A DNA stretch of 64,000 bases from positions 150,201 to 214,200 of the IMG/VR virus record IMGVR_UViG_3300032931_001151. One strand, written 5' to 3'. This document shows positions 28,653-58,444 of the stretch, one piece after another. Both the position numbers and the translations under genes were made by a program. The notes below the pieces were generated by a model. That model was not told where the DNA came from and did not search any database. It was given only the letters and a program-made list of their open reading frames with translations. Every line of letters starts with the position of its first letter. Within the stretch, counting starts at the first letter, position 1.

Positions 28653-28653
28653 A

Positions 28654-38694: not shown

Positions 38695-39723
38695 ATGATT
38701 AAAAAAGCTTTTATAACCGGTACGACAGGGCAAGATGGTAGTTATCTAATAGAATTTTTGCTTAATAAAGGTTACGAGGTTCACGGAATAGTTAGAAGAG
38801 CCTCAACTTTTAATACATCAAGGATTGATCATTTAATAAACGATTCAAATATTTTTGGAAAAACGTTTTTTACACATTATAGTGATATAACCGATCCTCA
38901 GAGTATAAATGAACTAATTAGTAAGATACAACCCGATGAGGTATATAATCTTGCTGCGCAAAGTCACGTTAAAGTTAGTTTTGAAATTCCGTATTATACG
39001 GCCCAAGTTGATGCATTGGGAACTTTAAATATTCTTGAAGCTATTAGAAATCATTGCCCGAAATCAAAAGTATACCAAGCATCAACCTCTGAAATGTTCG
39101 GTGGACAAGTAGATGAGATGCCTATAGGTGGATTTGTGGAAACTACTCCATTCCATCCTCGTAGTCCATATGGATGTGCTAAAATTTATGCATATTGGAT
39201 AACTAAAAATTATAGGGAAGCATATAATATCTTTGCGTGTAATGGACTTCTATTTAATCACGAATCTCCTAGGCGTGGTGATACATTTGTTACAAAAAAA
39301 ATAACCAATTGGGTTAAAAATTGGAACAACGATAATAAAACCCCAACATTAAAATTGGGTAATCTTGAAGCTTCTCGTGATTGGGGGCATGCTCGTGACT
39401 ATATAGAGGCTCAATGGTTAATATTGCAACAAAATATACCGCAAGATTATGTTATTGCAACCGGCACCACCTATACCGTCAAGCAATTTATAGAGGAATG
39501 TTTTAAATATATAGGAAAGAAAATAGATTGGGTTGGCATTGGCATTGATGAAAAAGGATATTGTGATGGTAAAATAGTAATAGAAGTAGATGCGAAATAT
39601 TTTAGACCATCCGAAGTTGACTATTTGTTGGGAAATCCATCTAAAGCATTTAAAGAGCTTAAATGGACACCGAAATTCACATTTGAAACTCTTGTACAGG
39701 ATATGATGAAAAATGAAAAATGA
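38695..39723 (+). CDS. gmd: GDP-mannose 4,6-dehydratase
   Basis: ITGTTGQDGSYL; YNLAAQSHV; QASTSE; PRSPYG.AK; FNHESPRRG; RDWGHA. Confidence 0.96.
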   Translation: MIKKAFITGTTGQDGSYLIEFLLNKGYEVHGIVRRASTFNTSRIDHLINDSNIFGKTFFTHYSDITDPQSINELISKIQPDEVYNLAAQSHVKVSFEIPYYTAQVDALGTLNILEAIRNHCPKSKVYQASTSEMFGGQVDEMPIGGFVETTPFHPRSPYGCAKIYAYWITKNYREAYNIFACNGLLFNHESPRRGDTFVTKKITNWVKNWNNDNKTPTLKLGNLEASRDWGHARDYIEAQWLILQQNIPQDYVIATGTTYTVKQFIEECFKYIGKKIDWVGIGIDEKGYCDGKIVIEVDAKYFRPSEVDYLLGNPSKAFKELKWTPKFTFETLVQDMMKNEK

Positions 39724-40642
39724 CAATATTTTAGTATTAGGTGGATCGGGATTAGTTGGAAGTTCAATAATTAGAAATCTTAAAGCTAAAGGATATTCTA
39801 ATATACACTCACCTAGGAGTTCTACTCTCAATTTATTAGATAAGACCGATGTATGTGCGTATATGTCGGAAATACAACCGGAGGTTGTAGTTATGTGTGC
39901 GGCAAAAGTTGGCGGCATTTCTGCAAATATCAAATATCCAGCCGAATTTGGGTATATAAATGGAATGATGAGTTTAAATGTAATTGATTGTTCTTATAAG
40001 AATAGAGTTAATAAATTACTTTACTTGGGTAGTAGTTGTATATATCCAAGAAATTGTCCGCAGCCTATGACAGAGGATAGTTTATTACAGGGACAATTTG
40101 AGCCAACAAATGAAATGTATGCTCTTTCAAAGGTGTTTGGATTAAAACTTTGTGAGGCATATAATAAGCAATACGGAACTAACTTCATAACTGTTCAACC
40201 ATGTAACATATATGGGGTTGGTGATAATTTTAATCCGGAGAATAGTCACGTTGTTGCTGGATTAATAGGAAAATTTCATAAAGCAAAAATTAATAATACC
40301 CCTTCAATAAGTATGTGGGGCACCGGAAATGCAAAACGAGAACTTATGTACGTAGATGATTGTGCCGAGGCTTGTACCTTTCTTCTTGAAAATTATAACG
40401 ATTCACAATTTATTAATGTTGGCACCGGAGTAGATATTACTATTAAAGAATTGTCCGAATTAGTTAAAGAAATAGTTGGATATAACGGGGAACTTACTTG
40501 GGATATCTCTAAACCAGACGGCATGCCTAGAAGAGTTCTTAATGTATCTAAAATAAATGCACTTGGATGGAAGCACACAATAAATATAAAGGAAGGTCTT
40601 CAAAAGACTTACGAGTGGTACTTAAAGAATGTGGGGAATTAA
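39713..40642 (+). CDS. fcl: GDP-L-fucose synthase / GDP-colitose synthase (Fcl/ColC family)
   Basis: GGSGLVG; AAKVGGI; LGSSCIYP; YALSK; SHV...LI; KPDGMPRR. Confidence 0.92.
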   Translation: MKNDNILVLGGSGLVGSSIIRNLKAKGYSNIHSPRSSTLNLLDKTDVCAYMSEIQPEVVVMCAAKVGGISANIKYPAEFGYINGMMSLNVIDCSYKNRVNKLLYLGSSCIYPRNCPQPMTEDSLLQGQFEPTNEMYALSKVFGLKLCEAYNKQYGTNFITVQPCNIYGVGDNFNPENSHVVAGLIGKFHKAKINNTPSISMWGTGNAKRELMYVDDCAEACTFLLENYNDSQFINVGTGVDITIKELSELVKEIVGYNGELTWDISKPDGMPRRVLNVSKINALGWKHTINIKEGLQKTYEWYLKNVGN

Positions 40643-41469
40643 TGATTAATACTATTATTTGGAGCAAAGATAGAGCTTGTCAATTAGATTTAACCCTTAA
40701 TACATATAAAAAATATTTTACCGAGTGGAAAGAACAACAAGTAAATATAATATATACTTATTCTAATCAGTTATATCATCAGGGATATGAAATAGTAAAG
40801 GCGAAACATCCGGAATTTAATTGGATAAAAGAGACTAACTTTAGACAAGACACTATAAATTGTTTTAATAAGTATAGAAGAACATATACATCTTTCGTCG
40901 TTGACGATGATGTGTTTATTGATTATTTTTCATTGAAGAGTGACGAATTTAGAATTTTTCAAAATGAGCCTAGCATAATATGTGTTAGTCCTAGAATGGC
41001 ACCATATGTTAATTATTGTTATCCTGCCAATTTAGATAGTCCACCCCCCCAGTTCCTATCTCAATACGATAAAAGGGTCTGGAATTGGAAATTGGGACAC
41101 CTCCGAGGGGATTGGGCATATGCCGCAAGTGTTGCTTGCCATCACATTTTTAGATCCGAAGACTTAGAGTATCCAATCAATAATATCCCATTTAAATTTG
41201 CTAATTCGTTTGAAGGTAATTGTTTACTTGGACATATTGATAATATAATTGGCCCTAAAAGACCCTATATGGTGTGCTTTGAAACATCTAAATGTATATG
41301 TTCGGAGAATAATAAGGTTCAAAACGAAAATCAAAATAGAAACGAGAATAGTCATCCCTTAGAATATATGAATGATATGTTGCTACAAGGAAAGAGATTA
41401 TGCCCTAATATAAACCATCAAGCAAGAATTAATGCTTGTCATGGCCCAGTACAAATCAAATGGATTTAA
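40642..41469 (+). CDS. Putative GT-A glycosyltransferase
   Basis: IIWSKDRACQL; VDDD. Confidence 0.55.
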   Translation: MINTIIWSKDRACQLDLTLNTYKKYFTEWKEQQVNIIYTYSNQLYHQGYEIVKAKHPEFNWIKETNFRQDTINCFNKYRRTYTSFVVDDDVFIDYFSLKSDEFRIFQNEPSIICVSPRMAPYVNYCYPANLDSPPPQFLSQYDKRVWNWKLGHLRGDWAYAASVACHHIFRSEDLEYPINNIPFKFANSFEGNCLLGHIDNIIGPKRPYMVCFETSKCICSENNKVQNENQNRNENSHPLEYMNDMLLQGKRLCPNINHQARINACHGPVQIKWI

Positions 41470-41479
41470 AGGAAAACAA

Positions 41480-42688
41480 ATGAAGTATCCTCTTGCTACC
41501 GAGTCTTGGGACGAAAAAGAAATCAATGCCGCATGCGAAGTTATAAAGTCCATGAAGTGTACTATGGGTGATAGATGCAAACAATTTGAGCAAGAGTTTG
41601 CTAAAATGTTCGGGAGTAAATATGCTATTTTTAGCAATTCGGGATCTTCCGCTAATTTATTAATGCTATCCGCATTAATGTATAGAAAAAATGGTCTAAA
41701 ATTAGAAATTGGAGATGAAGTAATAGTTCCTACAGTTTCTTGGAGTACTACTTATTACCCTATACATCAAAATGGATTAGCGTGTTGTTTTGTTGATATT
41801 GACAAAGACACGTTAAACATAGATTGTAATAAGATAGAAGCCGCTATTACTCCTAAAACAAAAGCTATATTAGCTGTAAATCTTTTAGGAAATCCTAACG
41901 ATTTTGATAGACTTAATGAAATATGTGTAAAGCACAATTTAATTTTACTTGAAGATAATTGTGAGTCTATGGGTGCTTTATACAAAGGAAAATATTGCGG
42001 ATCTATAGGACTAATGGGTTCTTTTAGTACGTTTTTTAGCCACCATATTAACTCAATTGAGGGCGGAATAACATTAACTAACGACGAAGAATTATATCAA
42101 ATAATGATCTCATTAAGAGCGCACGGATGGACACGAGGGTTGCCCAATAAGAATTTTGTTCATGATAAAGATGGTGTTGCTTTTAACGATTTATTTAGAT
42201 TCGTTTTACCGGGATATAATCTAAGACCAAATGAGGTATTTGCCGCTCTAGGTCTAGAACAACTAAAGAAGTTGCCCAAATTCATTGAAGATAGAATAAA
42301 AAATGCGGAATACTTTAATACAAGAATGGGTTATATTAAAAATAAATATCCAAACATGTTCACTACTCAATCCATTACTTTAAACTCAACCTCTTCTTGG
42401 TTTGGATTTGCTTTCGTTTTAGATTCGGAATTGAAAGGAAAGCGACTTGAAGTGGTTGAAGGGCTTACAATAGCTAATATTGATTGTAGACCAATCGTAG
42501 CAGGCAATTTCTGTAAGAACCCGGTCATTCAGCACATGAAAACGAGAATTAGTGGAAATACTAACTACGCAAATCATATAGATGAAAATGGGTTATTTAT
42601 TGGAAACAATCAAGGTAATATTAAAGATCAAATAGACCACTTTGCTAATACTTTTGATGCAATTATAGCAAGTATTCTTTCTAAATAG
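41480..42688 (+). CDS. colD: GDP-4-keto-6-deoxy-D-mannose 3-dehydratase (ColD, PLP-dependent)
   Basis: YPLA..SW; SGSSANLLM; VSWSTTYYP; VNLLGNP; LEDNCESMGA; FFSHH (His in place of the Schiff-base Lys); RAHGWTR; PGYN.RP. Confidence 0.88.
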   Translation: MKYPLATESWDEKEINAACEVIKSMKCTMGDRCKQFEQEFAKMFGSKYAIFSNSGSSANLLMLSALMYRKNGLKLEIGDEVIVPTVSWSTTYYPIHQNGLACCFVDIDKDTLNIDCNKIEAAITPKTKAILAVNLLGNPNDFDRLNEICVKHNLILLEDNCESMGALYKGKYCGSIGLMGSFSTFFSHHINSIEGGITLTNDEELYQIMISLRAHGWTRGLPNKNFVHDKDGVAFNDLFRFVLPGYNLRPNEVFAALGLEQLKKLPKFIEDRIKNAEYFNTRMGYIKNKYPNMFTTQSITLNSTSSWFGFAFVLDSELKGKRLEVVEGLTIANIDCRPIVAGNFCKNPVIQHMKTRISGNTNYANHIDENGLFIGNNQGNIKDQIDHFANTFDAIIASILSK

Positions 42689-42711
42689 TGAAACTATAGC
42701 AAGAATACTTG

Positions 42712-43551
42712 CTATTTAATTTTTTTGTATATTTTAACTAAATGAGCGAACGAGCTATTAGGATGATATATTCTAAAGTTAGTTCTTGCCAATAGTAGTA
42801 AATCAACAAAAGCATCTTCTACCGAATCGGTCGGTGTGTATACATTATTTGACCAACCGCCGTTTTGTTGTTTGGACACATATTTTTTATCAGATCTAAT
42901 AACAATATTTCTTTTATCTTTTTCTTTTATATATCGTTCATATTGAGGTGAATCCGAGCATACAAAGAAACTCCAGTTTGACATTACACTCATGCTATCC
43001 AAATAGTAATCGGCGTTTATTCCAGAATCTTCAAAGTCTGTACCTCTTGCATGAACGCCGATATAATCTTTATGTAAGTTAGCATTTTTCCAAAATTCAT
43101 CCACTTTATCAATAATATTTTTATTTATAGTAAGATAATATTGAAATATAGCCGTATGAGAGTCTATGCTTATATCGGGTAAGAATGTATTAGAGAATAC
43201 GACTAAATTTTCCGTTTTATCTTCGATTATTTTTTTGGTGTCAATTAAAGTACTACCATATTTTTTTATTAAGTCTCTCATCCCGGAAAGTTTGTTTAGA
43301 TTGTATTCATAATCACCCGCATCACTTGGACACCATACTTTAACATTAGATAGTAGTGATAGCTCCGATTCCTTTATGAATTTTATGTTTTTATTTGAAA
43401 ATAGGGATTCAAATGGTGCGAGACACCTTAAAGTTGGTTCCCATACTACTACAAGTTCTCTCCCGGTAAGATTAGCAATAACCCAACATGAAGCAATTGG
43501 CTTTAATCTATTCCCAATTCCCCCAGAACAATAACAAATTATACGACTCAT
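42712..43551 (-). CDS. Fucosyltransferase-like GT (GT11/GT23/NodZ-like)
   Basis: GGIGNRL; IGVHARGTD; FVCSDS; DLLLLA...SSF. Confidence 0.75.
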   Translation of the reverse strand: MSRIICYCSGGIGNRLKPIASCWVIANLTGRELVVVWEPTLRCLAPFESLFSNKNIKFIKESELSLLSNVKVWCPSDAGDYEYNLNKLSGMRDLIKKYGSTLIDTKKIIEDKTENLVVFSNTFLPDISIDSHTAIFQYYLTINKNIIDKVDEFWKNANLHKDYIGVHARGTDFEDSGINADYYLDSMSVMSNWSFFVCSDSPQYERYIKEKDKRNIVIRSDKKYVSKQQNGGWSNNVYTPTDSVEDAFVDLLLLARTNFRIYHPNSSFAHLVKIYKKIK

Positions 43552-44231
43552 ACATCTACCCAAGGCTTAGGTTGTCTAGGATCATGTCCCCATTTACTCA
43601 CAAATAACTCGGTGTTGTGTCCTATAATATTCCACGATCTATCATTATCCGCATAGTTTTTTCCTAAATGATATGTTAAAGTTCCTAGTTGTTGTGGTGC
43701 GGACTTTGTATATCCAAATTGTCTTAATGTTAATCCTATATCTTGATCTTCATGGCCATAGTGTCCGTTGTATCTTTCGTCATAATAACCAATTTCTTTT
43801 AACACATCATTTTTGAACCCTATATTAGCACACGAGAACCAAGCATTAGCATTAGCGAAATTATCAGAAGGAAATTGTATTATTCCTCTTGATATAGGAA
43901 AATTCTCTAATGAATGTAAGTGATTTTCAATAAATGTTTGAGATTGTGGAACACAATCGTCATCAAGAATTATGATATCCGGCGAATTACACATTTTCAT
44001 TGCTTCGTTTAGTCTTGCAACTTTAGTGTATCCCTCATCCTTAGCCCATAAATATCTTGAAACTATTCCGAATTTATTCGGATCAATCATATGGTGTGAT
44101 TTACTACCATCATCGGTAACTATTAAATTAAAATTGGTTATAGTTTGATACATCAATTTTTGCAAAGTTTGTTGTAAAAACTCGCTTCTATTATATGTAA
44201 CTATAATAATATCAACATCTTTAATTTTCAT
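43548..44231 (-). CDS. GT2 glycosyltransferase
   Basis: IIVTYNR; VTDDGS; LDDDC; YGHEDQD. Confidence 0.85.
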   Translation of the reverse strand: MKIKDVDIIIVTYNRSEFLQQTLQKLMYQTITNFNLIVTDDGSKSHHMIDPNKFGIVSRYLWAKDEGYTKVARLNEAMKMCNSPDIIILDDDCVPQSQTFIENHLHSLENFPISRGIIQFPSDNFANANAWFSCANIGFKNDVLKEIGYYDERYNGHYGHEDQDIGLTLRQFGYTKSAPQQLGTLTYHLGKNYADNDRSWNIIGHNTELFVSKWGHDPRQPKPWVDV

Positions 44232-44234
44232 ATT

Positions 44235-44936
44235 TCATTCCCAAAATACTTGGTTTTCTCTTTTTTTACCATAAGCGTCTACTATTAACGGAAAGCACAC
44301 TTCAAAAAAGTATCTATCTTTAAGATTCGTAGTGAAGAATTCTTCGGTGCTATTGTCTAAAAACCACTTTACTATTTTACCTTTTATAGCATAATGCGTT
44401 AATAACCACATAGTATTTGTTGGAATAGTTTCCGAATTTATGGGAATTTTCATATAAGAAGATATTACTTCTAAATTTTTACTAATTTTCATATCAAAAT
44501 TTCTTGCTATATGTGCCCAGCCACCAATTTCATCATTTTCAAGAATCTCATCATATTCTTTTCTCTTTTCAGCAAATTGCATAAAATAATCTCGGCATGA
44601 GATATACCATACACTATCTAGCGGATAGCTAATTCCTTTAGAATGCATAAAATATACATTTTCATAATCTTCTCTATTATCCTTCATCAATTTTAATGCC
44701 GATTGGAATCCGGATACATCGGAATTTACAGCTAAGTCGGGATCAACTAATGCGATATGAGCCTCTGGTAGTGTTGATTCAATTAAATCAATCCATGCTA
44801 AATCTGATTCGGCATTCACTCCAATATATACATCACAATCTCCAAAGTAATCTCTAATGTAACTTAAATATATTCCCGATCGATGTATAGTTGAATTTGG
44901 AATCCACGAAGAGAATACTACCGCATTTTTTTTCAT
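44235..44936 (-). CDS. Hypothetical, possibly GT-like
   Basis: YFMHSKG motif; embedded in the GT operon. Confidence 0.45.
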   Translation of the reverse strand: MKKNAVVFSSWIPNSTIHRSGIYLSYIRDYFGDCDVYIGVNAESDLAWIDLIESTLPEAHIALVDPDLAVNSDVSGFQSALKLMKDNREDYENVYFMHSKGISYPLDSVWYISCRDYFMQFAEKRKEYDEILENDEIGGWAHIARNFDMKISKNLEVISSYMKIPINSETIPTNTMWLLTHYAIKGKIVKWFLDNSTEEFFTTNLKDRYFFEVCFPLIVDAYGKKRENQVFWE

Positions 44937-44964
44937 TTTTTTAATCCTTTAATAATATTATACA

Positions 44965-46320
44965 CTAAAATCCTATTTTTTCATTAGGAGAAAATGGAAA
45001 ATTATTTATATTTAAATAGTTACCTATTACCGATTTGTATTGACTATTCTTAAGTGTATGTGTTATATTTAAGAATTCTTGAACAACTTCAGTATCAAGA
45101 AAAGGATATCTTCCTTCTTGTGAATAACTTCCCGTAACAAATTCGTCTTTTTTAAGATATGAGCACATACTACTACTATAAAACGACGCCCAAATAGGTT
45201 TATTATTTAGTTTCGTTGGAAATATAGTTTCTAAATTCTCGGGAAATACTCCTAGGAAATTTGAATGTTGGTATTTTGATGAGCCGTTCCAAGCATAATC
45301 TGAAAATAATTCATCCGCTCCCGCTCCGCTCATAAAGACTTTTCTATCATCTAATTTTGCTTTTGAACATACATAAGAAAGGCCATTAGACCCATTATCA
45401 TCCCATAAAGATAGATATGATTCCGAATAATTAGATCTCGCTGAATAAATTGTGTATTTAAACTCTTCGGTGTTGTCTAATAGATATTGGTGTGCCATAT
45501 TTCGCATACTAGGGGTTATAGTTAAAACTTCTAATTCGCAATTTGGATAGGACGTTAATATATTATATCTTTTATCTAATATCTCTTTATTTTCCGACCC
45601 TATTACACTAAATGCTTTAAATTTCGCCCCTTGCTTAATCATCTCACATATTAATGCTCCGCTATCATATCCACTTGACATTCCGATAAATAATTTTTGC
45701 GACATGTTTTGACAAGAACGTTTTTTTATACTATTTGAGAATGCTTTATTCCAATCATCAAAGTTTGTTTTATATTGATCTAAATTGAAGTCATAAATAG
45801 TTTTGGTTTCATAAATCCCGGTTAACATATCAAAAATAAGTGTAGTATTAGCATCAAACATCTTTATATTGCTATAAGTTTCTTCAAGCCCACTTTTATA
45901 TGACGCCACTCCTATATCTTTACCTTCTATGGCATACCATAACGGCTTCGTGCAAAAAACATCCCCCGTTACTATTAATATATTATTTTTAAAATCGGCC
46001 AATACTATTGCGAATTCTCCATCAAGCTTTTTTACAAAATCATTTCCATATTTTTTATAAAGCGGAATAATACATTTAGTATCATTATCATAGTCCCCAA
46101 ATTCTTTAAAGTTATATATCTCTCCATTAAAGATAATTACTATATCATCATCAACTAATGGTTGTGGAGTAAAAGTTCCGGTAATGCTTAGTAAATTATG
46201 AAGAAAAGTACATCCTTTATAATCTATAATATTAGTGGAATCCGGTCCACGCAATTTCATAAATCTATTTCTATGATCTATATTATCAATATTTTTTGTT
46301 GAAAATAGGATACTACACAT
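44965..46320 (-). CDS. AsnB-type glutamine amidotransferase
   Basis: N-terminal MC; RGPD; FNGEIYN; SSGYDS; SGAGADELF; RYPFLD. Confidence 0.88.
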   Translation of the reverse strand: MCSILFSTKNIDNIDHRNRFMKLRGPDSTNIIDYKGCTFLHNLLSITGTFTPQPLVDDDIVIIFNGEIYNFKEFGDYDNDTKCIIPLYKKYGNDFVKKLDGEFAIVLADFKNNILIVTGDVFCTKPLWYAIEGKDIGVASYKSGLEETYSNIKMFDANTTLIFDMLTGIYETKTIYDFNLDQYKTNFDDWNKAFSNSIKKRSCQNMSQKLFIGMSSGYDSGALICEMIKQGAKFKAFSVIGSENKEILDKRYNILTSYPNCELEVLTITPSMRNMAHQYLLDNTEEFKYTIYSARSNYSESYLSLWDDNGSNGLSYVCSKAKLDDRKVFMSGAGADELFSDYAWNGSSKYQHSNFLGVFPENLETIFPTKLNNKPIWASFYSSSMCSYLKKDEFVTGSYSQEGRYPFLDTEVVQEFLNITHTLKNSQYKSVIGNYLNINNFPFSPNEKIGF

Positions 46321-46328
46321 AATTTTCC

Positions 46329-47033
46329 TTATTTTGGGCCGCTACTAATATGACCACGAACTTGAGGCATTAGTCTATTACATCCTAAAGAGCCATCAGA
46401 ATTAAACCCGTTAGCATATCCTGGTAATATTTTTAATTCAATTCCAGTTTTCCAAACACATCTTGGAAAACTTAATTGATCTCTTGAACTAAATTTTTCA
46501 ATTTCATTCCACCACATCTCATTAAATTCTATCACATTACGGGTATTTTTTCTAATTGAGACTGGCAATTCAAATAATCCAAAGTTTTTTGGAAATCCTT
46601 CCTTTTCATATGATTGTATTTGGCTATCTATTAAATTGATATGATCATAATTTAATTCTTTTAATATCTTTGACTCTTCATAAGCACAATTTCGTTGATT
46701 GTGCTTAAATACCCCAATTTCAAGTTCTTTCAAATAATCTCTAATTATTATTCTAGGATCCTCAACTACGGCATGAGATACGTCGGCCCATAACCAATAA
46801 TCGTACATTGGTAAAATTCTATGTGGTAAAATTTTGTAGTATTTAGCATTTCTTCTATTAGAGTACATGTCCCCAATATGTCTTTTTTCTAAAGGAATTT
46901 GTCTCCATATAGTAGAATTAGGCCAAGGTCTATCAACGAAGGCATAGTAATCAACATTAGAATGGATTATAGTCGGATTGACTAGACTTTCTCTATCGCC
47001 ACATAATGAAGTTATTATTGCAATTTTATTCAT
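46329..47033 (-). CDS. DUF616-type glycosyltransferase
   Basis: R.AKYYKILPH; W.D; H..RNC.YEE; WW.EI....RDQLSF. Confidence 0.75.
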   Translation of the reverse strand: MNKIAIITSLCGDRESLVNPTIIHSNVDYYAFVDRPWPNSTIWRQIPLEKRHIGDMYSNRRNAKYYKILPHRILPMYDYWLWADVSHAVVEDPRIIIRDYLKELEIGVFKHNQRNCAYEESKILKELNYDHINLIDSQIQSYEKEGFPKNFGLFELPVSIRKNTRNVIEFNEMWWNEIEKFSSRDQLSFPRCVWKTGIELKILPGYANGFNSDGSLGCNRLMPQVRGHISSGPK

Positions 47034-47797
47034 TCTAATCTTTCCGGTTTTAAGATATAGTCGGAATGCTTTTCTAATACATACTTTTGTTCTTTTTGAG
47101 TTATCTCTATATTATCCCTTACTTGAGACGATATAGACTTTTCCCATATTCTAATACTAACTAAAAATTCATTAATAAGCTTTGGGGGTCCGTATTTTTT
47201 ATGTAATCTATAAAATAATTCACAATCCATTAGCCATATAAGTTCTTCATCAAAAAAATTATCATTATTTTTAAAATATATAGCACTAGGACATCCTAAC
47301 TCATTATATCCTTGTAATATATCATCGGTATATTTTGGGAATTGCGGTTTATGTTTTATTCCATTATATATTTGATTTGCATTAGAAATGTGATTAAATC
47401 CTATAGCGCCCCAATTATTGCCATTTTTATATTCTCTTATTATTTTATCAAGACAATCTATATCATAAAACATATCATCTTGGAACATGGGCTTTATAAT
47501 TTCTCCTTTAGAGTTCTTTATCCCCATATTTACGTTTGCCGATGAATTTCCTCTTTTATAATTATGCCTCATATAATTTATGAGGATATTTGATCCCATA
47601 AACTTAGATTTCAAATACATTTCAATTTCATTATTTTCCGAATGGTCTGTGATATTAATTTCATAATTTTTATACGTTTGACATATTATAGATTTCATTA
47701 GCTCATTAAGATATTTTATTCCGTTACCACTCATTTCATAACATGGAATACAAATAGAGATTTTACACATTGAATTTTTCCCATAGATAATGTGCAA
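47030..47797 (-). CDS. GT2 glycosyltransferase
   Basis: SICIP.YE; ITDHS; N..IKNSKGEII..MFQDD; LMDCE. Confidence 0.8.
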   Translation of the reverse strand: MHIIYGKNSMCKISICIPCYEMSGNGIKYLNELMKSIICQTYKNYEINITDHSENNEIEMYLKSKFMGSNILINYMRHNYKRGNSSANVNMGIKNSKGEIIKPMFQDDMFYDIDCLDKIIREYKNGNNWGAIGFNHISNANQIYNGIKHKPQFPKYTDDILQGYNELGCPSAIYFKNNDNFFDEELIWLMDCELFYRLHKKYGPPKLINEFLVSIRIWEKSISSQVRDNIEITQKEQKYVLEKHSDYILKPERLE

Positions 47798-48638
47798 AAT
47801 TCTTTTCTCCTCTTAATAAGTTTTTAGCAATTTTATAGTTCTTAGTACTTCCGTTTCTATAAGTATTAATTATGATATCCATCATATCGTTAATATTCTT
47901 ATTAGTTATATCAATATGAGATTCGTTAGTGAATATTTTAGATACTTCCGATGCTCCCCAATAAATCGGAATACTATTACACAAGATAGGATCATAGAAT
48001 TTTTCAGTTACCCAATATCTATAAGAGGCATTTTCAATTGCTATAGAATATTCATATGGTGAGAAAGCATCCGGCTTATGTTCTACTATTCCCTTAACTC
48101 TTGAATCTCCTTGATAGTAACGACATCCTCTTCCGTATATATGAATATCTAAATTAGTTTTTAATATTCTTTTTATTAGTTCATGTCTTAATGCATGTCC
48201 GCTAAAGTATGTTTTATCCGATGCTATTATAGACATTCTATATGGTTTACTGACATTTTCAAATTCGTCTTTTTCTCCGTAAATTGGGACTTGCGGAGCT
48301 AAATAGCAAATACCTTCTTGAAAACATGGCCAATTCGGAAATCTTTTCTTATCGTGGCATATATACGTTCCAATATTTTCTTTAATATATGGCAAATAAC
48401 TAGACGAATCTAATATCTCAAAAGGCTCATGCATTAACCCTAATACTCTTTCTTTTGGTACTTTTAATTGCGGAGTTCCATGATTTATAATAACCGCATG
48501 AGTATAGTTATCATCGTCAACAATTTTCATATTTTTATATTCTGCTTTTCCATATCCCCAAGATTTAAAAGCATTTCTTAATCCATATGATGGTGCAAAG
48601 TCGGAAAATATTTGTACTCTTATTTCGTCCATGGCCAA
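47763..48638 (-). CDS. GT10 (alpha-1,3/4-fucosyltransferase-like)
   Basis: YEYSIAIEN...YWVTEKFYD..L...IPIYWG. Confidence 0.8.
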   Translation of the reverse strand: MAMDEIRVQIFSDFAPSYGLRNAFKSWGYGKAEYKNMKIVDDDNYTHAVIINHGTPQLKVPKERVLGLMHEPFEILDSSSYLPYIKENIGTYICHDKKRFPNWPCFQEGICYLAPQVPIYGEKDEFENVSKPYRMSIIASDKTYFSGHALRHELIKRILKTNLDIHIYGRGCRYYQGDSRVKGIVEHKPDAFSPYEYSIAIENASYRYWVTEKFYDPILCNSIPIYWGASEVSKIFTNESHIDITNKNINDMMDIIINTYRNGSTKNYKIAKNLLRGEKNFAHYLWEKFNV

Positions 48639-49411
48639 CTCCTTACATAAGCTTTTAAATCTTCTTTTGACATTCCAATGATTTTTTTATATTCTTCTTC
48701 GTTTTGTTTAAATCTTGGATTGGTTGTATCGCTATTAAATGTTCTAGAATGGTCTAAATGGAATAATTTACCATCAATCGATCCTATTTTATATCCCAAT
48801 TTTCCAAATCTATCTCTTCTCTCAACATCTTCAGGTCCCCAAGACATAAAGTTTTCATTTTCCATACCTCCTTCTACGTATTTTGATTTATTCATAAATA
48901 AACATCCGCCGGGCGGTGGTGACGGATGTTCAAATGATACTAATGGATCAATTCCTGCTAAATTGAGAGTTAATCCAAATGAATTATGGTATTTACTTGG
49001 AATATTATGATTCGGCTTATTAAAAGGATAGCAAAAATCTAATATATTACCTCTAACAACTTGTGCGGCATTAAGATATTGATGTGGATAAAAAACTACA
49101 TCCGAGTCTTGGCTAACTATTATTGGGGTTTTAGCCCTCTTCGCCATAATATTTAGGTTTTTTGTTTTATGGAATAAGTCGGAGTCGTTTTGTCTATATA
49201 TGTATGTTAATTTTTTATTCCATTCTGCTCTCATTAATTGTGGAAATAGTGCTTGTTTCCCTTCTTCACATATGATGACAGAAGTATCAAAGTGCTTAAA
49301 AAGATACGAGAGAAGTAAATCTATTATTTTCTTTCTATCTTCTGATTCTATTTTAAGAGGTATTAAAAACGTTACGTCACGCAAATTAGACATTATTTTA
49401 TCCATCCCCAA
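48620..49411 (-). CDS. GT2/GT7-C-like glycosyltransferase
   Basis: QDSDV; GGCLF; NENF.SWGPED. Confidence 0.8.
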   Translation of the reverse strand: MGMDKIMSNLRDVTFLIPLKIESEDRKKIIDLLLSYLFKHFDTSVIICEEGKQALFPQLMRAEWNKKLTYIYRQNDSDLFHKTKNLNIMAKRAKTPIIVSQDSDVVFYPHQYLNAAQVVRGNILDFCYPFNKPNHNIPSKYHNSFGLTLNLAGIDPLVSFEHPSPPPGGCLFMNKSKYVEGGMENENFMSWGPEDVERRDRFGKLGYKIGSIDGKLFHLDHSRTFNSDTTNPRFKQNEEEYKKIIGMSKEDLKAYVRSWPWTK

Positions 49412-50151
49412 GTTGCCACTTGTGTTTTCAATGCTTCTCTTGAAAGAGATGATATTCTATGAAATTCCATCTCGTTATCTCTATATGCTTTATGTTCGGT
49501 GTTTGCGCTATTAGGACTTCTCGGATGCGATAGATGATAAAGAGCGCCCTCTATTCTTGAAATTCTATATCCTAATGTTCCAAAACGTTTTAACCTTTCA
49601 TCATCTTCCCAACCCCATGACACAAATCGTTCATTTTCCATTCCACCTTCAATGAACTTTTGCTTATTCCAGAATATAGCACCACCAACGGATTTAGGAT
49701 GAATTAAGTTGCCATTTGATGGTGTTATATTCTCAATCGTTAGATTATTTTGAACATTTGATATGTGTGGTTCAATTAAATCTATAAATCGTCCATCATA
49801 TGGGTAAACCATATCATATTTATTCTCTCTAATAACTCTTACGGCTTGGACATATTGTGCAATTGGGAATAAAACGTCGGTGTCATAGTTAACTATAATT
49901 GGCGTAGTTGATTGTTTGGCTAGAACATTAAGACAATACGTTCTATGCATAAGATAATCACCACGAGGAATGAAAATATGCTTGAATTTTCCAACATCTT
50001 TAAATTTTGATTCCGTGTCATTTTCGCAAATTAATATATTTGTATCAAAATGTTTATTGAGATAATTTATAATAATTCTAATATTTCGTAATCTTTCGGG
50101 GGTGTCTAATTTGAAGGGGATATTAAATGTCACGTCGGTTAAATTTATCAT
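49393..50151 (-). CDS. GT2/GT7-C-like glycosyltransferase, paralog of the adjacent gene
   Basis: YDTDV; GGAIF; NERFVSWGWED. Confidence 0.8.
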   Translation of the reverse strand: MINLTDVTFNIPFKLDTPERLRNIRIIINYLNKHFDTNILICENDTESKFKDVGKFKHIFIPRGDYLMHRTYCLNVLAKQSTTPIIVNYDTDVLFPIAQYVQAVRVIRENKYDMVYPYDGRFIDLIEPHISNVQNNLTIENITPSNGNLIHPKSVGGAIFWNKQKFIEGGMENERFVSWGWEDDERLKRFGTLGYRISRIEGALYHLSHPRSPNSANTEHKAYRDNEMEFHRISSLSREALKTQVATWGWIK

Positions 50152-50774
50152 ATTTCTTTTATTAAACCTTTATCTAAATAGTGGTTATATAATACCGTTT
50201 CTGCTTGTTGTGGATGATAATTAAAACAATCGCTTTTATCTAAATATTTTTCCCAATAATACTTGTATGGGTATTTTCTAGCCGGATCAAATCCTGTCAC
50301 GAATATTTCAGCATCTTTGAATCTATATAAACATGATTCTATAGTAGTCATTCCTGAGTCTGGGTAATACCATTCCATGTTATTTTTTAAATTCTCGCTT
50401 ATTGTCTTCATTTTATTGTATAAATTGTCGTAAATGTAAGGATCTACAAATATAAATTCTAATGGTTTAAATCTACCAAAATGTTCTCTAGCCCTAACTC
50501 TATTATTATGATGTCCTTTTGCAAATTTGTCTGGTATCCAAACTTCATTGCATAGTTTGAAATTTTCTATTAATCTATGACTCCCTAATAATCCCGCCGT
50601 AGCCCCTTCTCCCGTTATCATCATAGAAATAATATCTACTTTTTTACCAACATAACTTTCCCACCCTTCAATGAGAAAATTATTCATCCTAATAACCCTA
50701 TCACAAGAATCAATGAAATCTCCATTTTTAACCATGGAAGCCTTATATCCATTTGCAACAATCGCTATTCTCAT
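50148..50774 (-). CDS. GT29 (sialyltransferase-like) protein
   Basis: IAIVANG...NGDFIDSCDRVIRMN (sialylmotif L-like); PDSG...I...L......VTGFD (motif S-like). Confidence 0.65.
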   Translation of the reverse strand: MRIAIVANGYKASMVKNGDFIDSCDRVIRMNNFLIEGWESYVGKKVDIISMMITGEGATAGLLGSHRLIENFKLCNEVWIPDKFAKGHHNNRVRAREHFGRFKPLEFIFVDPYIYDNLYNKMKTISENLKNNMEWYYPDSGMTTIESCLYRFKDAEIFVTGFDPARKYPYKYYWEKYLDKSDCFNYHPQQAETVLYNHYLDKGLIKEI

Positions 50775-51589
50775 TTATGATTTCTCCAAAATTCAGAAGC
50801 CTCTTGGATTTGTTGATTAATATTTTGTTTAACTACTCCGCTATCTCTTTGGCATACTTTTACTTTCCATTTAGCATATTCTTCGTCATTTTCCGGTGGG
50901 TGGATGATGGGTATAGAATCTGACATTTGCCAAGTAAATCCTTTCTGTCCCAAATCCATAAGGAAATAAGCATCATCACCGGCGTATACGCCCATAACCC
51001 TATATCCGCCAATCGTTTCCCATGCCCTTCTTGACATAAATAGGCATCCGCCCGCAATTCCACTCGGTTGATTAGGCCATACAACTTTTTCGTTGAATGT
51101 TTTGCCATTAAATGTTATAGAATAATCATTTACATTTTCATAACAAGTTTTATAATGACATCCGTGTCCGTTTTGTTGTAATCCTATTAACCCAAATGGT
51201 TTGCCTTTTATAGTCTCTGTCTTATTAGCCATAGCAATAAGACGATTGAAGAATTCTTCATTATCTTGGGGGAATAGTATATCCGAATCGGCTGACATAA
51301 TATACTTGTGGTGAGACTTTAAGAACTTTTTCGTTAAAGTGTTTACTACTACGGCTTTACCTACATTATCATTAAATGATAATATGTCTTTTTTTCCAAA
51401 TTGGTCTTTAATGGTTGATAAAATTGGTGCCCACTGTTGTTTATCTTTGCACCATCCGCCGAAGCAAACGTCAACATTCTCTACTTTGTGTTCTTTTAAG
51501 TATTTGCCCAAAGATATTAGAGAATTTATGTTTCTTTCTGTAACTCTAGTTATTGGTCCAAATATTGGCTGACAAAGTAAAATTGACAT
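50771..51589 (-). CDS. GT2-like glycosyltransferase
   Basis: NVGKA; ADSDI; AGGCLF; YAGDDA. Confidence 0.7.
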   Translation of the reverse strand: MSILLCQPIFGPITRVTERNINSLISLGKYLKEHKVENVDVCFGGWCKDKQQWAPILSTIKDQFGKKDILSFNDNVGKAVVVNTLTKKFLKSHHKYIMSADSDILFPQDNEEFFNRLIAMANKTETIKGKPFGLIGLQQNGHGCHYKTCYENVNDYSITFNGKTFNEKVVWPNQPSGIAGGCLFMSRRAWETIGGYRVMGVYAGDDAYFLMDLGQKGFTWQMSDSIPIIHPPENDEEYAKWKVKVCQRDSGVVKQNINQQIQEASEFWRNHK

Positions 51590-51673
51590 AAATATTCCTT
51601 ATATTGTATAATGTAATTATACCATAGAAGATATTTATTTTCCCTTCTAAATATATGTAATAGGAGATAATTT

Positions 51674-58072: not shown

Positions 58073-58150
58073 GGGCAAAAGTCTAGCTGGTATGCTAGTA
58101 AACGTCTGATAAGCGTTTTTAGGTGAGTTCGATTCTCACTTTGCCCACCA
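58073..58150 (+). tRNA. tRNA-Ile(GAT)
   Basis: GGGCAAA/TTTGCCC; CT-GAT-AA; TTCGATT; CCA. Confidence 0.85.
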
Positions 58151-58218
58151 TTCCCTTTAATAGAGTTGGAGTTGAAACTATTTTAGCTGAGGTTAAGCTA
58201 ATTAAAACCTCAAGTCAT

Positions 58219-58294
58219 CAGGCCGTAGTGTTTAACAGTAGCATGGCTCGTTTGGGGCGAGGTGGAGGGAGTGCAAATCTCCCCGGCTTGACCA
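58219..58294 (+). tRNA. tRNA-Pro(TGG)
   Basis: CAGGCCG/CGGCTTG; TT-TGG-GG; CCA. Confidence 0.85.
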
Positions 58295-58309
58295 TTTTTA
58301 GTAATTCAT

Positions 58310-58383: not shown

Positions 58384-58444
58384 CTTTTATTAACAATAGA
58401 ATTAATATATGATATAATGTACTTTCACTATTAGAAAGGATTAT

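What the first reader, a model, noticed from the sequence alone, without database searches (positions are those of the whole stretch)
38695..43551. Phage-encoded GDP-colitose (3,6-dideoxy sugar) pathway
Seen: gmd, an Fcl/ColC-family reductase and a PLP enzyme with the ColD signature (FFSHH, His instead of Lys) in one operon, next to a fucosyltransferase-type GT. Established: Gmd, ColD and ColC convert GDP-mannose to GDP-colitose, an O-antigen sugar of E. coli O55/O111 and V. cholerae O139; Gmd plus Fcl gives GDP-fucose. Inference: the phage can make GDP-colitose and/or GDP-fucose, which is unusual for a bacteriophage.
Basis: partly seen in the sequence, partly recalled or inferred. Interest (0 to 1): 0.75.

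Follow-up and report, generated by a model that had tools for sequence, protein, structure and literature searches.

The report
Phage operon for GDP-colitose and GDP-fucose
An uncultured T4-like phage carries a conserved four-gene operon that should turn the host's GDP-mannose into the rare sugar colitose and probably fucose, followed by eleven more glycan-building genes. This shows that a whole lineage of phages builds its own unusual sugar coat, on a target that is still unknown.

Summary

**What is there**
- The window is the last 64 kb of a 214 kb T4-like phage genome.

**Key evidence**
- The PLP enzyme is a true ColD orthologue. It scores 429 bits to E. coli O55 ColD against 195 to E1, keeps Ser187-His188, lacks the E1 iron-sulfur cysteines, and sits inside the ColD clade.
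- The reductase is not of the canonical ColC clade. It groups with E. coli Fcl, so GDP-fucose and GDP-colitose are both likely products.
- The convergent gene has a NodZ/FUT8/POFUT fold.
- That gene heads an 11-gene minus-strand cluster (42712-51589) of nine glycosyltransferase-like genes, an AsnB-like amidotransferase and one gene of unknown function.

**Conservation**
- The nucleotide-sugar module is syntenic in eight T4-like contigs, with ColD identity down to 57%, and dN/dS is 0.05-0.17 for nine genes compared with L001.
- The genome shows no GDP-mannose supply genes and no recognisable flippase or polymerase.

**Novelty**
- No deposited phage has a ColD orthologue above 35% identity.
- However, cyanophage gmd/fcl clusters are known, and many IMG/VR contigs carry ColD-like genes.

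I rate this a new variant of a known kind, of moderate interest. The acceptor is unknown.

The parts
38695..39723 (+). gmd, GDP-mannose 4,6-dehydratase (342 aa). It has a strong RBS (GGGAGG) upstream.
   Evidence: TIGR01472 scores 493 bits, above the cut-off of 415. Pfam GDP_Man_Dehyd gives E 4e-135. The RBS is seen.
39713..40642 (+). Fcl-type GDP-4-keto-6-deoxyhexose epimerase/4-reductase (309 aa). It is the presumed GDP-L-fucose and GDP-L-colitose synthase.
   Evidence: It is 46% identical to E. coli Fcl (311 bits) and 38% identical to E. coli O55 ColC (227 bits). In the tree it sits in the Fcl clade, support 100, branch length 0.93. S107, C109, Y136, K140 and H179 are conserved. NF047922 scores 420 bits, below the cut-off of 500.
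40642..41469 (+). GT-A fold glycosyltransferase (about 275 aa) with an invariant DD (DxD) motif. It belongs to a small family restricted to these phages and has no Pfam match.
   Evidence: AlphaFold2 gives pLDDT 96.4. Foldseek matches GnT-I, TarP, POMGNT1 and SpsA. D86 and D87 are invariant in 50 homologues. Only 183 homologues were found, many on ColD-bearing contigs.
41480..42688 (+). colD, GDP-4-keto-6-deoxy-D-mannose 3-dehydratase (402 aa counted from ATG 41480; the ORF opens at 41432).
   Evidence: PDB 2gms ColD gives E 1.7e-127 and 429 bits, against 195 bits for E1 3bcx and 131 bits for perosamine synthase. The protein lies inside the ColD clade, support 98/98. Ser187 and His188 are present. 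Three of the four E1 [2Fe-2S] cysteines are absent.
42696..42715 (+). Hairpin plus T-run in the 23-bp gap between the convergent operons. It is a candidate terminator.
   Evidence: Found. It is a single consensus match, and such matches are not enriched over shuffled sequence.
42712..43551 (-). GT23/NodZ-FUT8-POFUT-like fucosyltransferase-fold enzyme (279 aa). It is a candidate fucosyl- or colitosyl-transferase.
   Evidence: Pfam NodZ scores 32 bits against a cut-off of 28.3. The AF2 model (pLDDT 87.5) gives only fucosyltransferases in its top 50 PDB hits. The GVHARGTDF motif is invariant.
43548..44231 (-). GT2 family glycosyltransferase (227 aa).
   Evidence: Pfam Glycos_transf_2, E 2e-13.
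44235..44936 (-). Conserved protein of unknown function (233 aa).
   Evidence: No family hit was found. It is syntenic in L001, L003 and L102. dN/dS is 0.13.
44965..46320 (-). AsnB-like glutamine amidotransferase (451 aa). Its presumed role is amidation of a sugar carboxylate or a similar glycan modification.
   Evidence: It hits Pfam GATase_7, GATase_6 and Asn_synthase. TIGR01536 scores 135 bits, below its cut-off.
46329..47033 (-). TOD1/MUCI70 glycosyltransferase-like protein (234 aa).
   Evidence: PF04765, E 1e-22. phrog_26101 is annotated as a glycosyltransferase.
47030..47797 (-). GT2 family glycosyltransferase (about 250 aa).
   Evidence: PF00535, E 4e-11.
47763..48638 (-). GT10 (alpha-1,3/4-fucosyltransferase family) protein (about 290 aa).
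   Evidence: PF00852 scores 42 bits against a cut-off of 23.9. The same family is called in L001, L003, L086, L087 and L103.
48620..50151 (-). Two adjacent GT7C-like (galactosyltransferase C-terminal-like) proteins, at 48620-49411 and 49393-50151.
   Evidence: PF02709 scores 21.6 and 29.6 bits against a cut-off of 23.
50148..50774 (-). GT29 (sialyltransferase family)-like protein (208 aa).
   Evidence: PF00777 scores 49 bits against a cut-off of 23.
50771..51589 (-). First gene of the minus-strand operon, a weak GT21-like glycosyltransferase (272 aa). An extended -10-like TGGTATAAT lies upstream.
   Evidence: PF13506 scores 21.9 bits against a cut-off of 21.7.

Best explanation
A lytic-type, uncultured T4-like phage carries, inside its DNA-replication module, a four-gene operon: gmd, an Fcl-type reductase, a GT-A transferase and colD. 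The operon diverts the host's GDP-mannose pool into GDP-6-deoxy and GDP-3,6-dideoxy sugars.

**Proposed pathway**
1. Gmd oxidises and dehydrates GDP-mannose to GDP-4-keto-6-deoxy-D-mannose.
2. ColD, a PMP enzyme with His188 in place of the aminotransferase lysine, removes the 3-hydroxyl to give GDP-4-keto-3,6-dideoxy-D-mannose. Glutamate regenerates the PMP.
3. The single Fcl-type epimerase/reductase then acts on whichever 4-keto sugar it meets.
   - From the ColD product, C-5 epimerisation plus C-4 reduction gives GDP-L-colitose (3-deoxy-L-fucose).
   - From the Gmd product, 3,5-epimerisation plus reduction gives GDP-L-fucose.

**Use of the donors**
The donors are consumed by these proteins, all of which lack predicted transmembrane segments:
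- the embedded GT-A transferase;
- the convergent FUT8/NodZ/POFUT-fold transferase;
- the GT10 enzyme;
- the remaining glycosyltransferase-like enzymes;
- an AsnB-like amidotransferase.

Together they would assemble a fucose/colitose-containing oligosaccharide in the infected cell's cytoplasm.

**What is shown and what is inferred**
- Shown by sequence, fold, phylogeny and synteny: the gene identities, the operon structure, the phage origin and purifying selection.
- Inferred: the reductase accepts the 3-deoxy substrate, both sugars are made, and the identity of the acceptor (a virion protein, or a host envelope intermediate).
For: **Phage origin.** The genome is a single 214.2 kb contig of 32.8% GC.
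- The cluster is flanked by the topoisomerase II subunits, the gp44 clamp loader, RegA, primase, gp32, DNA polymerase, UvsW/X/Y and a class II ribonucleotide reductase.
- A Gp23-family capsid protein is present.

**Enzyme identities.**
- Gmd scores above the equivalog cut-off.
- ColD scores 429 bits against 195 for E1 in the PDB search.
- ColD lies inside the ColD clade with the crystallised E. coli O55 enzyme, support 98/98.
- All recalled ColD active-site residues are conserved, including S187 and H188.
- The E1 iron-sulfur cysteines are missing.
- The reductase keeps the SDR triad and the Cys109/His179 epimerisation pair.

**Only one candidate reductase.** It is the only Fcl/ColC-family gene in the genome.

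**Conservation.**
- gmd, the Fcl-type reductase and colD are adjacent in 8 of 8 examined T4-like contigs. ColD identity runs from 80% down to 57%.
- In seven of the eight contigs a roughly 270-aa gene sits between the reductase and colD. In L104 a 284-aa gene follows colD instead, and it gave no BLAST match to the GT-A protein.
- dN/dS for window versus L001 is 0.05-0.17.

**Precedent for an Fcl-type partner.** Three bacterial ColD loci also pair ColD with an Fcl-type reductase. In two of those assemblies it is the only Fcl/ColC-family gene.

**Transferases.**
- One has a NodZ/FUT8/POFUT fold.
- One is a GT10.
- One has a GT-A fold with an invariant DD motif.
- From my own knowledge, E. coli O55's colitosyltransferase is a fucosyltransferase-family enzyme. 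Fucosyltransferase-like enzymes are therefore plausible colitose users.
Against: - There is no biochemical data of any kind.
- The reductase is outside the canonical ColC group. 74 of 77 ColD-linked bacterial reductases, and E. coli O55 ColC, lie outside its clade. It also scores below NCBI's Fcl equivalog cut-off, 420 against 500. Its activity on the 3-deoxy substrate is therefore assumed.
- ColD and Fcl would compete for the same intermediate, so the product ratio is unknown.
- The phage encodes no ManB, ManC or other NDP-sugar pyrophosphorylase, so the pathway works only in a host that makes GDP-mannose. The host is unknown.
- No acceptor, initiating transferase, flippase, polymerase or ligase was detected.
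- The GT29-like enzyme has no matching CMP-sugar synthetase in the genome.
- The record is estimated to be 90% complete, so the absences are soft.
Confidence: 0.7

Rival explanations
1. Fucose is the only finished sugar. The Fcl-type enzyme makes GDP-L-fucose. The ColD product, GDP-4-keto-3,6-dideoxymannose, is either processed by another enzyme (host or unidentified phage) into a different 3,6-dideoxy or 4-amino-3,4,6-trideoxy hexose, or is used as such. Colitose itself would not be made.
For: - The reductase sits in the Fcl clade with E. coli Fcl, not with ColC.
- Many IMG/VR contigs carry gmd plus a ColD-like gene with no Fcl/ColC-type reductase nearby. ColD products may therefore have other fates in phages.
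- A second pair of sugar enzymes, RmlB-like and RmlD-like, exists at 27627-29952.
Against: - The reductase is adjacent to colD in 8 of 8 relatives.
- No other aminotransferase or 4-reductase lies in the cluster.
- An Fcl mechanism applied to a 3-deoxy substrate gives exactly the L-xylo (colitose) configuration. This is inference from the known mechanism.
- Bacterial genomes exist in which an Fcl-type enzyme is the only possible ColD partner.
Confidence: 0.17
2. The PLP enzyme is not a 3-dehydratase in this phage. It would be an aminotransferase, or an E1/RfbH-type CDP-sugar dehydratase, so no GDP-3,6-dideoxy sugar is made.
For: - NCBIfam's best-scoring model is RfbH, at 287 bits and below its cut-off of 423. 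That library returned no ColD model.
- JGI annotates the relatives as 'CDP-6-deoxy-D-xylo-4-hexulose-3-dehydrase'.
Against: - The protein scores 429 bits to ColD structures against 195 to E1.
- It lies inside the ColD clade, separate from the E1-like clade.
- It has His, not Lys, at position 188, with Ser187.
- Three of the four E1 iron-sulfur cysteines are replaced.
- gmd, a GDP-sugar enzyme, is in the same operon, and no CDP-glucose pathway genes are present.
Confidence: 0.04
3. The cluster is bacterial DNA, either a host flank or a mis-assembly in a record that IMG/VR labels 'provirus'. It would not be a phage function.
For: - IMG/VR classes the record as a provirus, trimmed from a 217,484-bp contig to 214,200 bp.
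- The enzymes have 50-58% identical bacterial homologues.
Against: - The cluster lies about 21 kb from the record's end, between the T4-type topoisomerase II subunit and a ribonucleotide reductase.
- Its GC content is the same as the rest of the genome.
- The same junctions, topo II to gmd and the glycosyltransferase cluster to downstream phage genes, recur in independent metagenomic contigs from different samples.
- The phage ColD proteins form their own clade, support 100/99.
Confidence: 0.02

Closest known systems
Bacterial GDP-L-colitose pathway (Gmd, ColD, ColC) of E. coli O55/O111, Yersinia pseudotuberculosis and Vibrio cholerae O139 O-antigen clusters
   Same: - gmd and a true ColD orthologue are present. 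The ColD is 52% identical to the crystallised E. coli O55 enzyme, with the same Ser187-His188 and no iron-sulfur motif.
- A bifunctional SDR epimerase/reductase sits in the same operon.
- Fucosyltransferase-family transferases lie nearby.
   Different: - The reductase is of the Fcl (fucose synthase) clade, not the ColC clade that accompanies ColD in 74 of 77 bacterial loci.
- A GT-A transferase is inserted between the reductase and colD.
- No manB, manC, gmm, wzx, wzy or initiating transferase is present.
- The genes lie in a phage replication module rather than a chromosomal O-antigen locus.
T4-like cyanophage 'LPS / cell-wall' gene clusters (P-SSM2, S-SKS1, S-SRM01, S-SCSM1)
   Same: These are T4-like phages carrying gmd, fcl, NodZ-like and other fucosyltransferases, and several glycosyltransferases. 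In all of them the function is known only from annotation and the acceptor is unknown (PMC9602691).
   Different: - No ColD orthologue is present in those phages. The best DegT-family hit in 50,697 deposited phage records is 34% identical.
- The present phage is only about 35% identical in capsid and topoisomerase to any named phage.
- It has topoisomerase II genes.
- Its cluster sits inside the replication module and is conserved across a deep clade.
Synechococcus phage ACG-2014f cassette gp223-gp226 (annotated epimerase, epimerase, aminotransferase, glycosyltransferase)
   Same: The operon logic is the same: gmd (56% identical), an Fcl-type reductase (44%), a His-type DegT enzyme, and then a GT11 enzyme 32% identical to the E. 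coli O55 alpha-1,2-fucosyltransferase-family protein.
   Different: - Its DegT enzyme is only 32% identical to ColD. It has GHH instead of SHH and sits on a long branch outside the ColD clade, so its substrate and product are less certain.
- There is no embedded GT-A gene.
Chlorovirus PBCV-1 GDP-mannose 4,6-dehydratase / GDP-4-keto-6-deoxymannose epimerase-reductase and virus-encoded capsid glycosylation (from my own knowledge)
   Same: - A virus encodes Gmd and an Fcl-type enzyme.
- It also encodes a set of soluble glycosyltransferases that are not membrane-anchored.
- No lipid-carrier or export machinery is encoded.
   Different: - The host is eukaryotic.
- No 3-dehydratase is present.
- Capsid glycosylation is shown experimentally there and is only a hypothesis here.

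Membership tests
ColD (GDP-4-keto-6-deoxy-D-mannose 3-dehydratase, PMP-dependent) | Histidine replaces the catalytic lysine of the sugar aminotransferases (His188), preceded by Ser187. | tested here: met
   STFFSHHI aligns with SSFYSHHI of E. coli ColD. 3b8x, which reads SNHI at this site, marks the first His as residue 188. S187 and H188 are invariant in 17 homologues and were checked by alignment.
ColD (GDP-4-keto-6-deoxy-D-mannose 3-dehydratase, PMP-dependent) | The protein groups with characterised ColD rather than with E1/RfbH, SpnQ-type enzymes or perosamine synthase. | tested here: met
   It scores 429 bits to 2gms, against 195 to E1 3bcx and 131 to perosamine synthase 3bn1. The ML tree places it inside the ColD clade with E. 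coli O55 ColD at 98/98, with the E1-like clade separate at 99/99.
ColD (GDP-4-keto-6-deoxy-D-mannose 3-dehydratase, PMP-dependent) | No [2Fe-2S] cysteine motif, and no need for an E3-type reductase. | tested here: met
   Of four cysteine columns invariant in seven E1-like sequences, the window protein and all 20 ColD-clade rows keep only the first. The other three are Leu, a gap and His in the window protein. The review PMC8987622 states that the cluster is absent in ColD.
ColD (GDP-4-keto-6-deoxy-D-mannose 3-dehydratase, PMP-dependent) | The enzyme acts on the GDP-linked 4-keto-6-deoxymannose made by Gmd. | not testable with these tools
   Support is contextual only. gmd is in the same operon here, lies within the ±10 kb flanks of most of the 80 bacterial ColD loci, and is usually just upstream of the reductase and colD. 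The recalled GDP-binding arginines R219, R250 and R331 are conserved.
ColC (GDP-L-colitose synthase) | The protein belongs to the clade of reductases that accompany ColD, including biochemically linked E. coli O55 ColC. | tested here: not met
   It is 38% identical (227 bits) to E. coli O55 ColC, against 46% (311 bits) to E. coli Fcl. In the tree it is separated from E. coli ColC and 74 of 77 ColD-linked reductases by a branch with support 100 and length 0.93.
ColC (GDP-L-colitose synthase) | C-5 epimerisation and C-4 reduction of GDP-4-keto-3,6-dideoxy-D-mannose. | not testable with these tools
   The catalytic Ser, Tyr, Lys, Cys and His are shared by Fcl, ColC and the phage enzyme, so they do not discriminate. 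The function is inferred from strict adjacency to colD (8 of 8 contigs) and from bacterial genomes where an Fcl-type enzyme is the only candidate.
Fcl / GFS (GDP-L-fucose synthase) | SDR triad Ser107-Tyr136-Lys140 plus the epimerisation pair Cys109 and His179 (E. coli numbering, roles recalled from the literature). | tested here: met
   All five residues are conserved at identical positions.
Fcl / GFS (GDP-L-fucose synthase) | The protein reaches the curated equivalog score of NCBIfam NF047922. | tested here: not met
   It scores 420 bits against a cut-off of 500. It nevertheless falls in the Fcl clade with E. coli Fcl.
Gmd (GDP-mannose 4,6-dehydratase) | The protein reaches the curated equivalog score of TIGR01472. 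| tested here: met
   It scores 493 bits against a cut-off of 415, with full-length coverage 3-340 of 342.
GT23/GT65/GT68 fucosyltransferase superfamily (NodZ, FUT8, POFUT1/2) | The fold of GDP-fucose-dependent fucosyltransferases, and the conserved H-x-R-x-x-D motif. | tested here: met
   All top-50 Foldseek PDB hits are FUT8, NodZ, POFUT1 or POFUT2, with TM up to 0.65. GVHARGTDF is invariant in six homologues. Pfam NodZ scores 32 bits against 28.3. The donor sugar, fucose or colitose, was not tested.
Wzx/Wzy-dependent O-antigen gene cluster | The cluster encodes an initiating phosphoglycosyltransferase, a flippase and a polymerase or ligase. | tested here: not met
   tblastn with E. coli WcaJ, Wzx and Wzy gave no hit. 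Wzy_C and ABC2_membrane HMMs gave no hit. No cluster protein has a TM-like segment. Sensitivity for these divergent families is limited.

The most novel reading that the evidence does not exclude
This uncultured T4-like lineage glycosylates its own virion proteins (capsid or fibres) in the cytoplasm, using a fully phage-encoded pathway that resembles the chlorovirus one. Under this reading:
- a single Fcl-type enzyme is a natural dual GDP-fucose/GDP-colitose synthase;
- the embedded GT-A enzyme, or the POFUT/FUT8-fold enzyme, is the first transferase to put colitose on a protein;
- the variable glycosyltransferase set downstream gives each phage a different glycan coat.

The evidence does not exclude this. 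All the enzymes lack predicted transmembrane segments. No lipid-carrier, flippase or polymerase genes were found. No hydroxymethyl-pyrimidine synthase was found that could support DNA glycosylation. One transferase shares the fold of protein O-fucosyltransferases.
Probability: 0.25. Interest if true: 0.8.

Novelty: new variant of a known kind. Interest (0 to 1): 0.55.

Why it matters
**A sugar not known from viruses.** 3,6-Dideoxyhexoses such as colitose are regarded as bacterial O-antigen sugars. I found no paper describing a virus-encoded route to one, in two full-text searches.

**A core function, not a stray gene.**
- The route is a conserved part of a deep and apparently widespread uncultured T4-like phage lineage.
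- Its divergence and purifying selection resemble those of the neighbouring replication genes.
- It is tied to a large and variable set of glycosyltransferases.
- Glycan synthesis therefore looks like a core phage function here, rather than an occasional auxiliary gene.

**A new enzyme arrangement.**
- A fucose-synthase-type enzyme replaces the dedicated ColC.
- If that enzyme is bifunctional, it would explain how one operon supplies two donors.
- It could also be useful for enzymatic synthesis of GDP-colitose.

**An old question made testable.**
- What do the 'LPS gene' clusters of T4-like marine phages modify: the host envelope or the virion?
- This locus offers a small, defined set of soluble enzymes.
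- Colitose would be a chemically distinctive sugar that can be traced.

Tried and rejected
**Searches that found nothing**
- A public sequencing-run search with the 4.9 kb operon listed no run. I therefore have no expression or environment data, and read laying was not used.
- The single-protein scan of IMG/VR found nothing because its peptide patterns were too specific. The alignment-based scan worked.
- tblastn of the whole phage genome with E. coli ManB, ManC, Gmm, WcaJ, WcaI, Wzx, Wzy, Wzz, the GT4 and the alpha-1,2-fucosyltransferase returned only gmd, fcl and colD.
- HMM searches of the genome for NTP_transferase, CTP_transf_3, ABC2_membrane and Wzy_C were all negative.

**Membrane-protein leads that led nowhere**
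- A 701-aa ORF with 12 hydrophobic segments (G000 128386-130491) was tested as a possible GT-C, oligosaccharyltransferase or Wzy. It looks like a tail or tape-measure-type protein and has no Pfam hit, so I rejected it.
- The 5-TM protein at 29995-30837 was tested as a Wzm-like permease. I found no support; it belongs to a phage-only family.

**Hypotheses considered and downgraded**
- DNA glycosylation is unlikely. No thymidylate-synthase-family enzyme, which would include a dCMP or dUMP hydroxymethylase, is in the genome.
- T4 late-promoter motifs (TATAAATA) are not enriched and none sits upstream of either operon. Sigma-70-like and terminator-like scans are not above shuffled expectation, so timing of expression stays open.
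- The host could not be inferred. The capsid and topoisomerase are only about 35% identical to any named phage, and cluster-member names gave no organism.

**Literature**
- The searches 'colitose + phage genome' and 'colitose + viral' gave no report of a virus-encoded colitose pathway.

Full report
**1. Setting**

The window is the last 64 kb of a single 214,200-bp contig with 32.8% GC. IMG/VR lists the record as a 'provirus' that is about 90% complete.

The gene content is that of a T4-like lytic phage.
- Around the finding lie UvsY, UvsW, gp46/47-like nuclease subunits, a family B DNA polymerase, UvsX, a DnaB-type helicase and gp32.
- Also present are the topoisomerase II large subunit, the gp44 clamp loader, RegA, primase, the gp52-like topoisomerase subunit and a class II ribonucleotide reductase.
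- A Gp23-family capsid gene lies upstream of the window.
- The capsid and topoisomerase proteins are only about 35-37% identical to those of any named phage. This is a deeply divergent, uncultured lineage.
- GC content is even across the cluster.

**2. The observation**

At 38695-42688 on the + strand four genes are packed with overlapping or nearly abutting stops and starts. A GGGAGG ribosome-binding site precedes them, and a hairpin with a T-run follows them.

*Gene 1* is gmd. TIGR01472 scores 493 bits against a cut-off of 415.

*Gene 2* is an Fcl/ColC-family SDR.
- It matches E. coli GDP-fucose synthetase structures at E 1e-92.
- Ser107, Cys109, Tyr136, Lys140 and His179 are conserved.

- It models at pLDDT 96 as a GT-A glycosyltransferase. 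The nearest structures are GnT-I, TarP, POMGNT1 and SpsA.
- It has an invariant Asp-Asp pair.
- Its true start is the ATG at 40642, judged from its homologues.

*Gene 4* is the PLP/PMP enzyme.
- Its likely start is the ATG at 41480 (MKYPLA...), which matches E. coli ColD.
- It carries FFSHH, with His188 where aminotransferases have lysine.

*The convergent gene* at 42712-43551 hits Pfam NodZ just above threshold. Its model matches only GDP-fucose fucosyltransferases in the PDB: FUT8, NodZ, POFUT1 and POFUT2. It carries an invariant GVHARGTDF motif.

**3. Is the PLP enzyme really ColD?**

Yes, as far as sequence can tell.
- It scores 429 bits to the E. coli O55 ColD structures. That compares with 195 bits to Yersinia E1 and 131 bits to perosamine synthase.
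- I built a maximum-likelihood tree with bacterial ColD proteins, E1-like proteins from the same bacterial loci, and a lysine-type aminotransferase as outgroup. The phage protein lies inside the ColD clade that holds E. coli O55 ColD (98/98). The E1-like clade is separate (99/99).
- The four cysteines that are invariant in the E1-like set form the [2Fe-2S] motif described in PMC8987622. In every ColD-clade member, including the window protein, only one of them remains.
- Residues I recall as PMP- and GDP-binding in ColD are all conserved: G56, S57, D159, E162, S183, R219, N248, R250 and R331.
- NCBIfam names RfbH as best hit only because it returned no ColD model. That score is below the RfbH cut-off.

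**4. Is the reductase ColC?**

Not by descent.
- I fetched 80 bacterial ColD loci and the E. coli O55:H7 O-antigen and colanic acid regions.
- In bacteria the usual order is gmd-colC-colD. The ColD-adjacent reductases are 31-43% identical to the phage enzyme.
- The phage enzyme is 46% identical to E. coli Fcl but only 38% identical to E. coli O55 ColC.
- In a 131-sequence tree, a branch with support 100 and length 0.93 separates an Fcl clade from the rest. The Fcl clade holds E. coli Fcl, generic 'GDP-L-fucose synthase' proteins, the phage enzyme and its relatives, and three ColD-linked bacterial enzymes. Outside it lie E. coli ColC and 74 of the 77 ColD-linked bacterial reductases.
- It is the only Fcl/ColC-family gene in the phage genome.
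- In two of the three bacterial assemblies that pair ColD with an Fcl-type enzyme, that enzyme is likewise the only family member.

The simplest reading is that an Fcl-type enzyme can serve ColD. Fcl chemistry is epimerisation through Cys109 and His179 followed by C-4 reduction. Applied to a substrate with no 3-hydroxyl, it gives 3-deoxy-L-fucose, which is colitose. The same enzyme should also make GDP-fucose from the Gmd product. This step is inference.

**5. Conservation**

The closest ColD homologues (80-57% identity) and the closest reductase homologues lie on the same metagenomic contigs.
- I examined eight contigs in all: the window plus L001, L003, L086, L087, L102, L103 and L104.
- All eight show gmd, the Fcl-type reductase and colD next to RegA, primase and, in most cases, the topoisomerase II subunit.
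- In seven of the eight a roughly 270-aa gene sits between the reductase and colD. In L104 a 284-aa gene follows colD instead, and it gave no BLAST match to the GT-A protein.
- The phage ColD proteins form one clade at 100/99.
- Between the window and L001, synonymous sites are saturated and dN/dS is 0.05-0.17. That holds for all four operon genes, four downstream genes and the neighbouring topoisomerase gene's amino-acid identity is similar.
- The GT-A family has only 183 detectable members among 5.8 billion proteins, and many sit on ColD-bearing contigs.

The nucleotide-sugar module is thus an old, vertically kept part of this lineage. The downstream transferase set varies: GT2 genes are swapped for methyltransferases in L086 and L087, and a GT11 appears in L104.

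**6. The larger cluster**

From 51589 down to 42712 on the minus strand lie eleven genes:
- a weak GT21-like gene;
- a GT29-like gene;
- two GT7C-like genes;
- a GT10 gene;
- a GT2 gene;
- a TOD1/MUCI70-like gene;
- an AsnB-like amidotransferase;
- a gene of unknown function;
- a second GT2 gene;
- the FUT8/NodZ-fold enzyme.

None of these proteins, nor the four operon proteins, has a TM-like segment.

The genome shows none of the following within the sensitivity of the searches: ManB, ManC or another NDP-sugar pyrophosphorylase, CMP-sugar synthetase, WcaJ-type initiating transferase, Wzx, Wzy/WaaL or ABC-2 permease. It also has no thymidylate-synthase-family enzyme that could make hydroxymethyl pyrimidines for DNA glycosylation.

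The donors must therefore come from host GDP-mannose. The acceptor is either a cytoplasmic macromolecule, such as a virion protein, or a host lipid-linked intermediate that the host then exports. I cannot decide between these.

**7. Comparison with what is known**

- gmd and fcl, with NodZ-like and other fucosyltransferases, are already annotated in T4-like cyanophages (PMC9602691).
- No deposited phage record has a ColD orthologue. The best tblastn hit is 34% identical.
- Some of those distant hits are nonetheless His-type enzymes.
  - Phage S-H68 has a true E1-type enzyme with all four cysteines.
  - The ACG-2014f phages have a gmd, Fcl-type, His-type DegT, GT11 cassette annotated as 'aminotransferase'.
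  - A 642-kb uncultured phage has an Fcl-type gene next to a His-type DegT gene.
- In IMG/VR, at least 569 contigs encode relatives of the family. About 30 of the best 80 carry the F-[FY]-S-H-H motif, most of them next to gmd, and many of those have no Fcl/ColC-type reductase nearby.
- Two full-text searches found no paper on a virus-encoded colitose pathway.

**8. Verdict**

1. The last enzyme is a fucose-synthase-type protein rather than a ColC.
2. The operon contains a fourth gene, a GT-A transferase.
3. It is part of a 15-gene glycan locus conserved in a whole phage lineage.

I classify it as a new variant of a known kind. It is a ColD pathway with an Fcl-type partner, in a phage. Its interest is moderate and would rise if the glycan turns out to decorate the virion.

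Noticed in passing
window 27627-29952 (+), plus 29995-30837 (+): A second 6-deoxyhexose module lies between gp32 and the topoisomerase II large subunit. It consists of an RmlB-like NDP-glucose 4,6-dehydratase (TIGR01181, 197 bits, below cut-off) and a 432-aa protein with an RmlD-like reductase domain behind a roughly 150-aa N-terminal domain. A phage-only protein with 5 TM-like segments follows. This may be an NDP-rhamnose-type pathway.
   Followed up: partly
window 10509-12353 (+): A 614-aa protein with two GT2-type glycosyltransferase domains sits directly after UvsW, far from the main glycan cluster.
   Followed up: partly
window 58073-63885 (+): An array of 18 tRNA genes. It includes one with anticodon CTA (ARAGORN calls it 'tRNA-Pyl'; it would read the amber stop codon) at 60215-60287, and a tRNA-Ser with the unusual anticodon ACT at 59987-60078.
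   Followed up: no
L097 (Synechococcus phage ACG-2014f, NC_026927.1 160958-164871): Genes gp223-gp226 are annotated epimerase, epimerase, aminotransferase and glycosyltransferase. They are in fact gmd, an Fcl-type reductase, a His-type (GHH) DegT enzyme and a GT11 fucosyl/colitosyl-transferase-family protein. This may be a second, unrecognised phage route to a GDP-3,6-dideoxy sugar.
   Followed up: partly
L096 (Synechococcus phage S-H68, MK016663.1 28080-29375): This cyanophage carries a DegT enzyme with His at the catalytic position and all four E1-type iron-sulfur cysteines. RmlB-, RmlC- and epimerase-type genes lie next to it. It looks like a true E1/RfbH-type 3-dehydratase in a phage.
   Followed up: partly
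L108-L134 (IMG/VR contigs): About 20 viral contigs carry a ColD-like gene (41-49% identity, motif FFSHH[IL]QTMEGG) immediately downstream of gmd. No Fcl/ColC-type reductase lies within the fetched flanks. The fate of the ColD product there is unclear.
   Followed up: no
window 51583-51612 (+): A perfect sigma-70 consensus (TTGACA, 18 nt, TATAAT) lies in the divergent intergenic region between the glycosyltransferase operon and the next + strand gene. On the opposite strand a TGGTATAAT extended -10-like element precedes the first glycosyltransferase gene. These hint at early, host-polymerase-driven transcription.
   Followed up: partly
L001 and L086 source contigs (385,866 and 415,074 bp), also contigs of 365-406 kb: Several relatives with the same cluster sit on contigs about twice the size of this 214 kb genome. 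They could be concatemer assemblies or genuinely larger genomes in the same lineage.
   Followed up: no
whole record G000: IMG/VR labels the record 'provirus', trimmed from a 217,484-bp contig. The gene content is that of a T4-like virulent phage, and I saw no integrase in the parts I examined. The label may be an artefact of host-like sugar genes or of end trimming.
   Followed up: no
window 50148-50774 (-): A GT29 (sialyltransferase family)-like gene is present, although the genome has no detectable CMP-sugar synthetase (CTP_transf_3). Its donor sugar would have to come from the host.
   Followed up: partly
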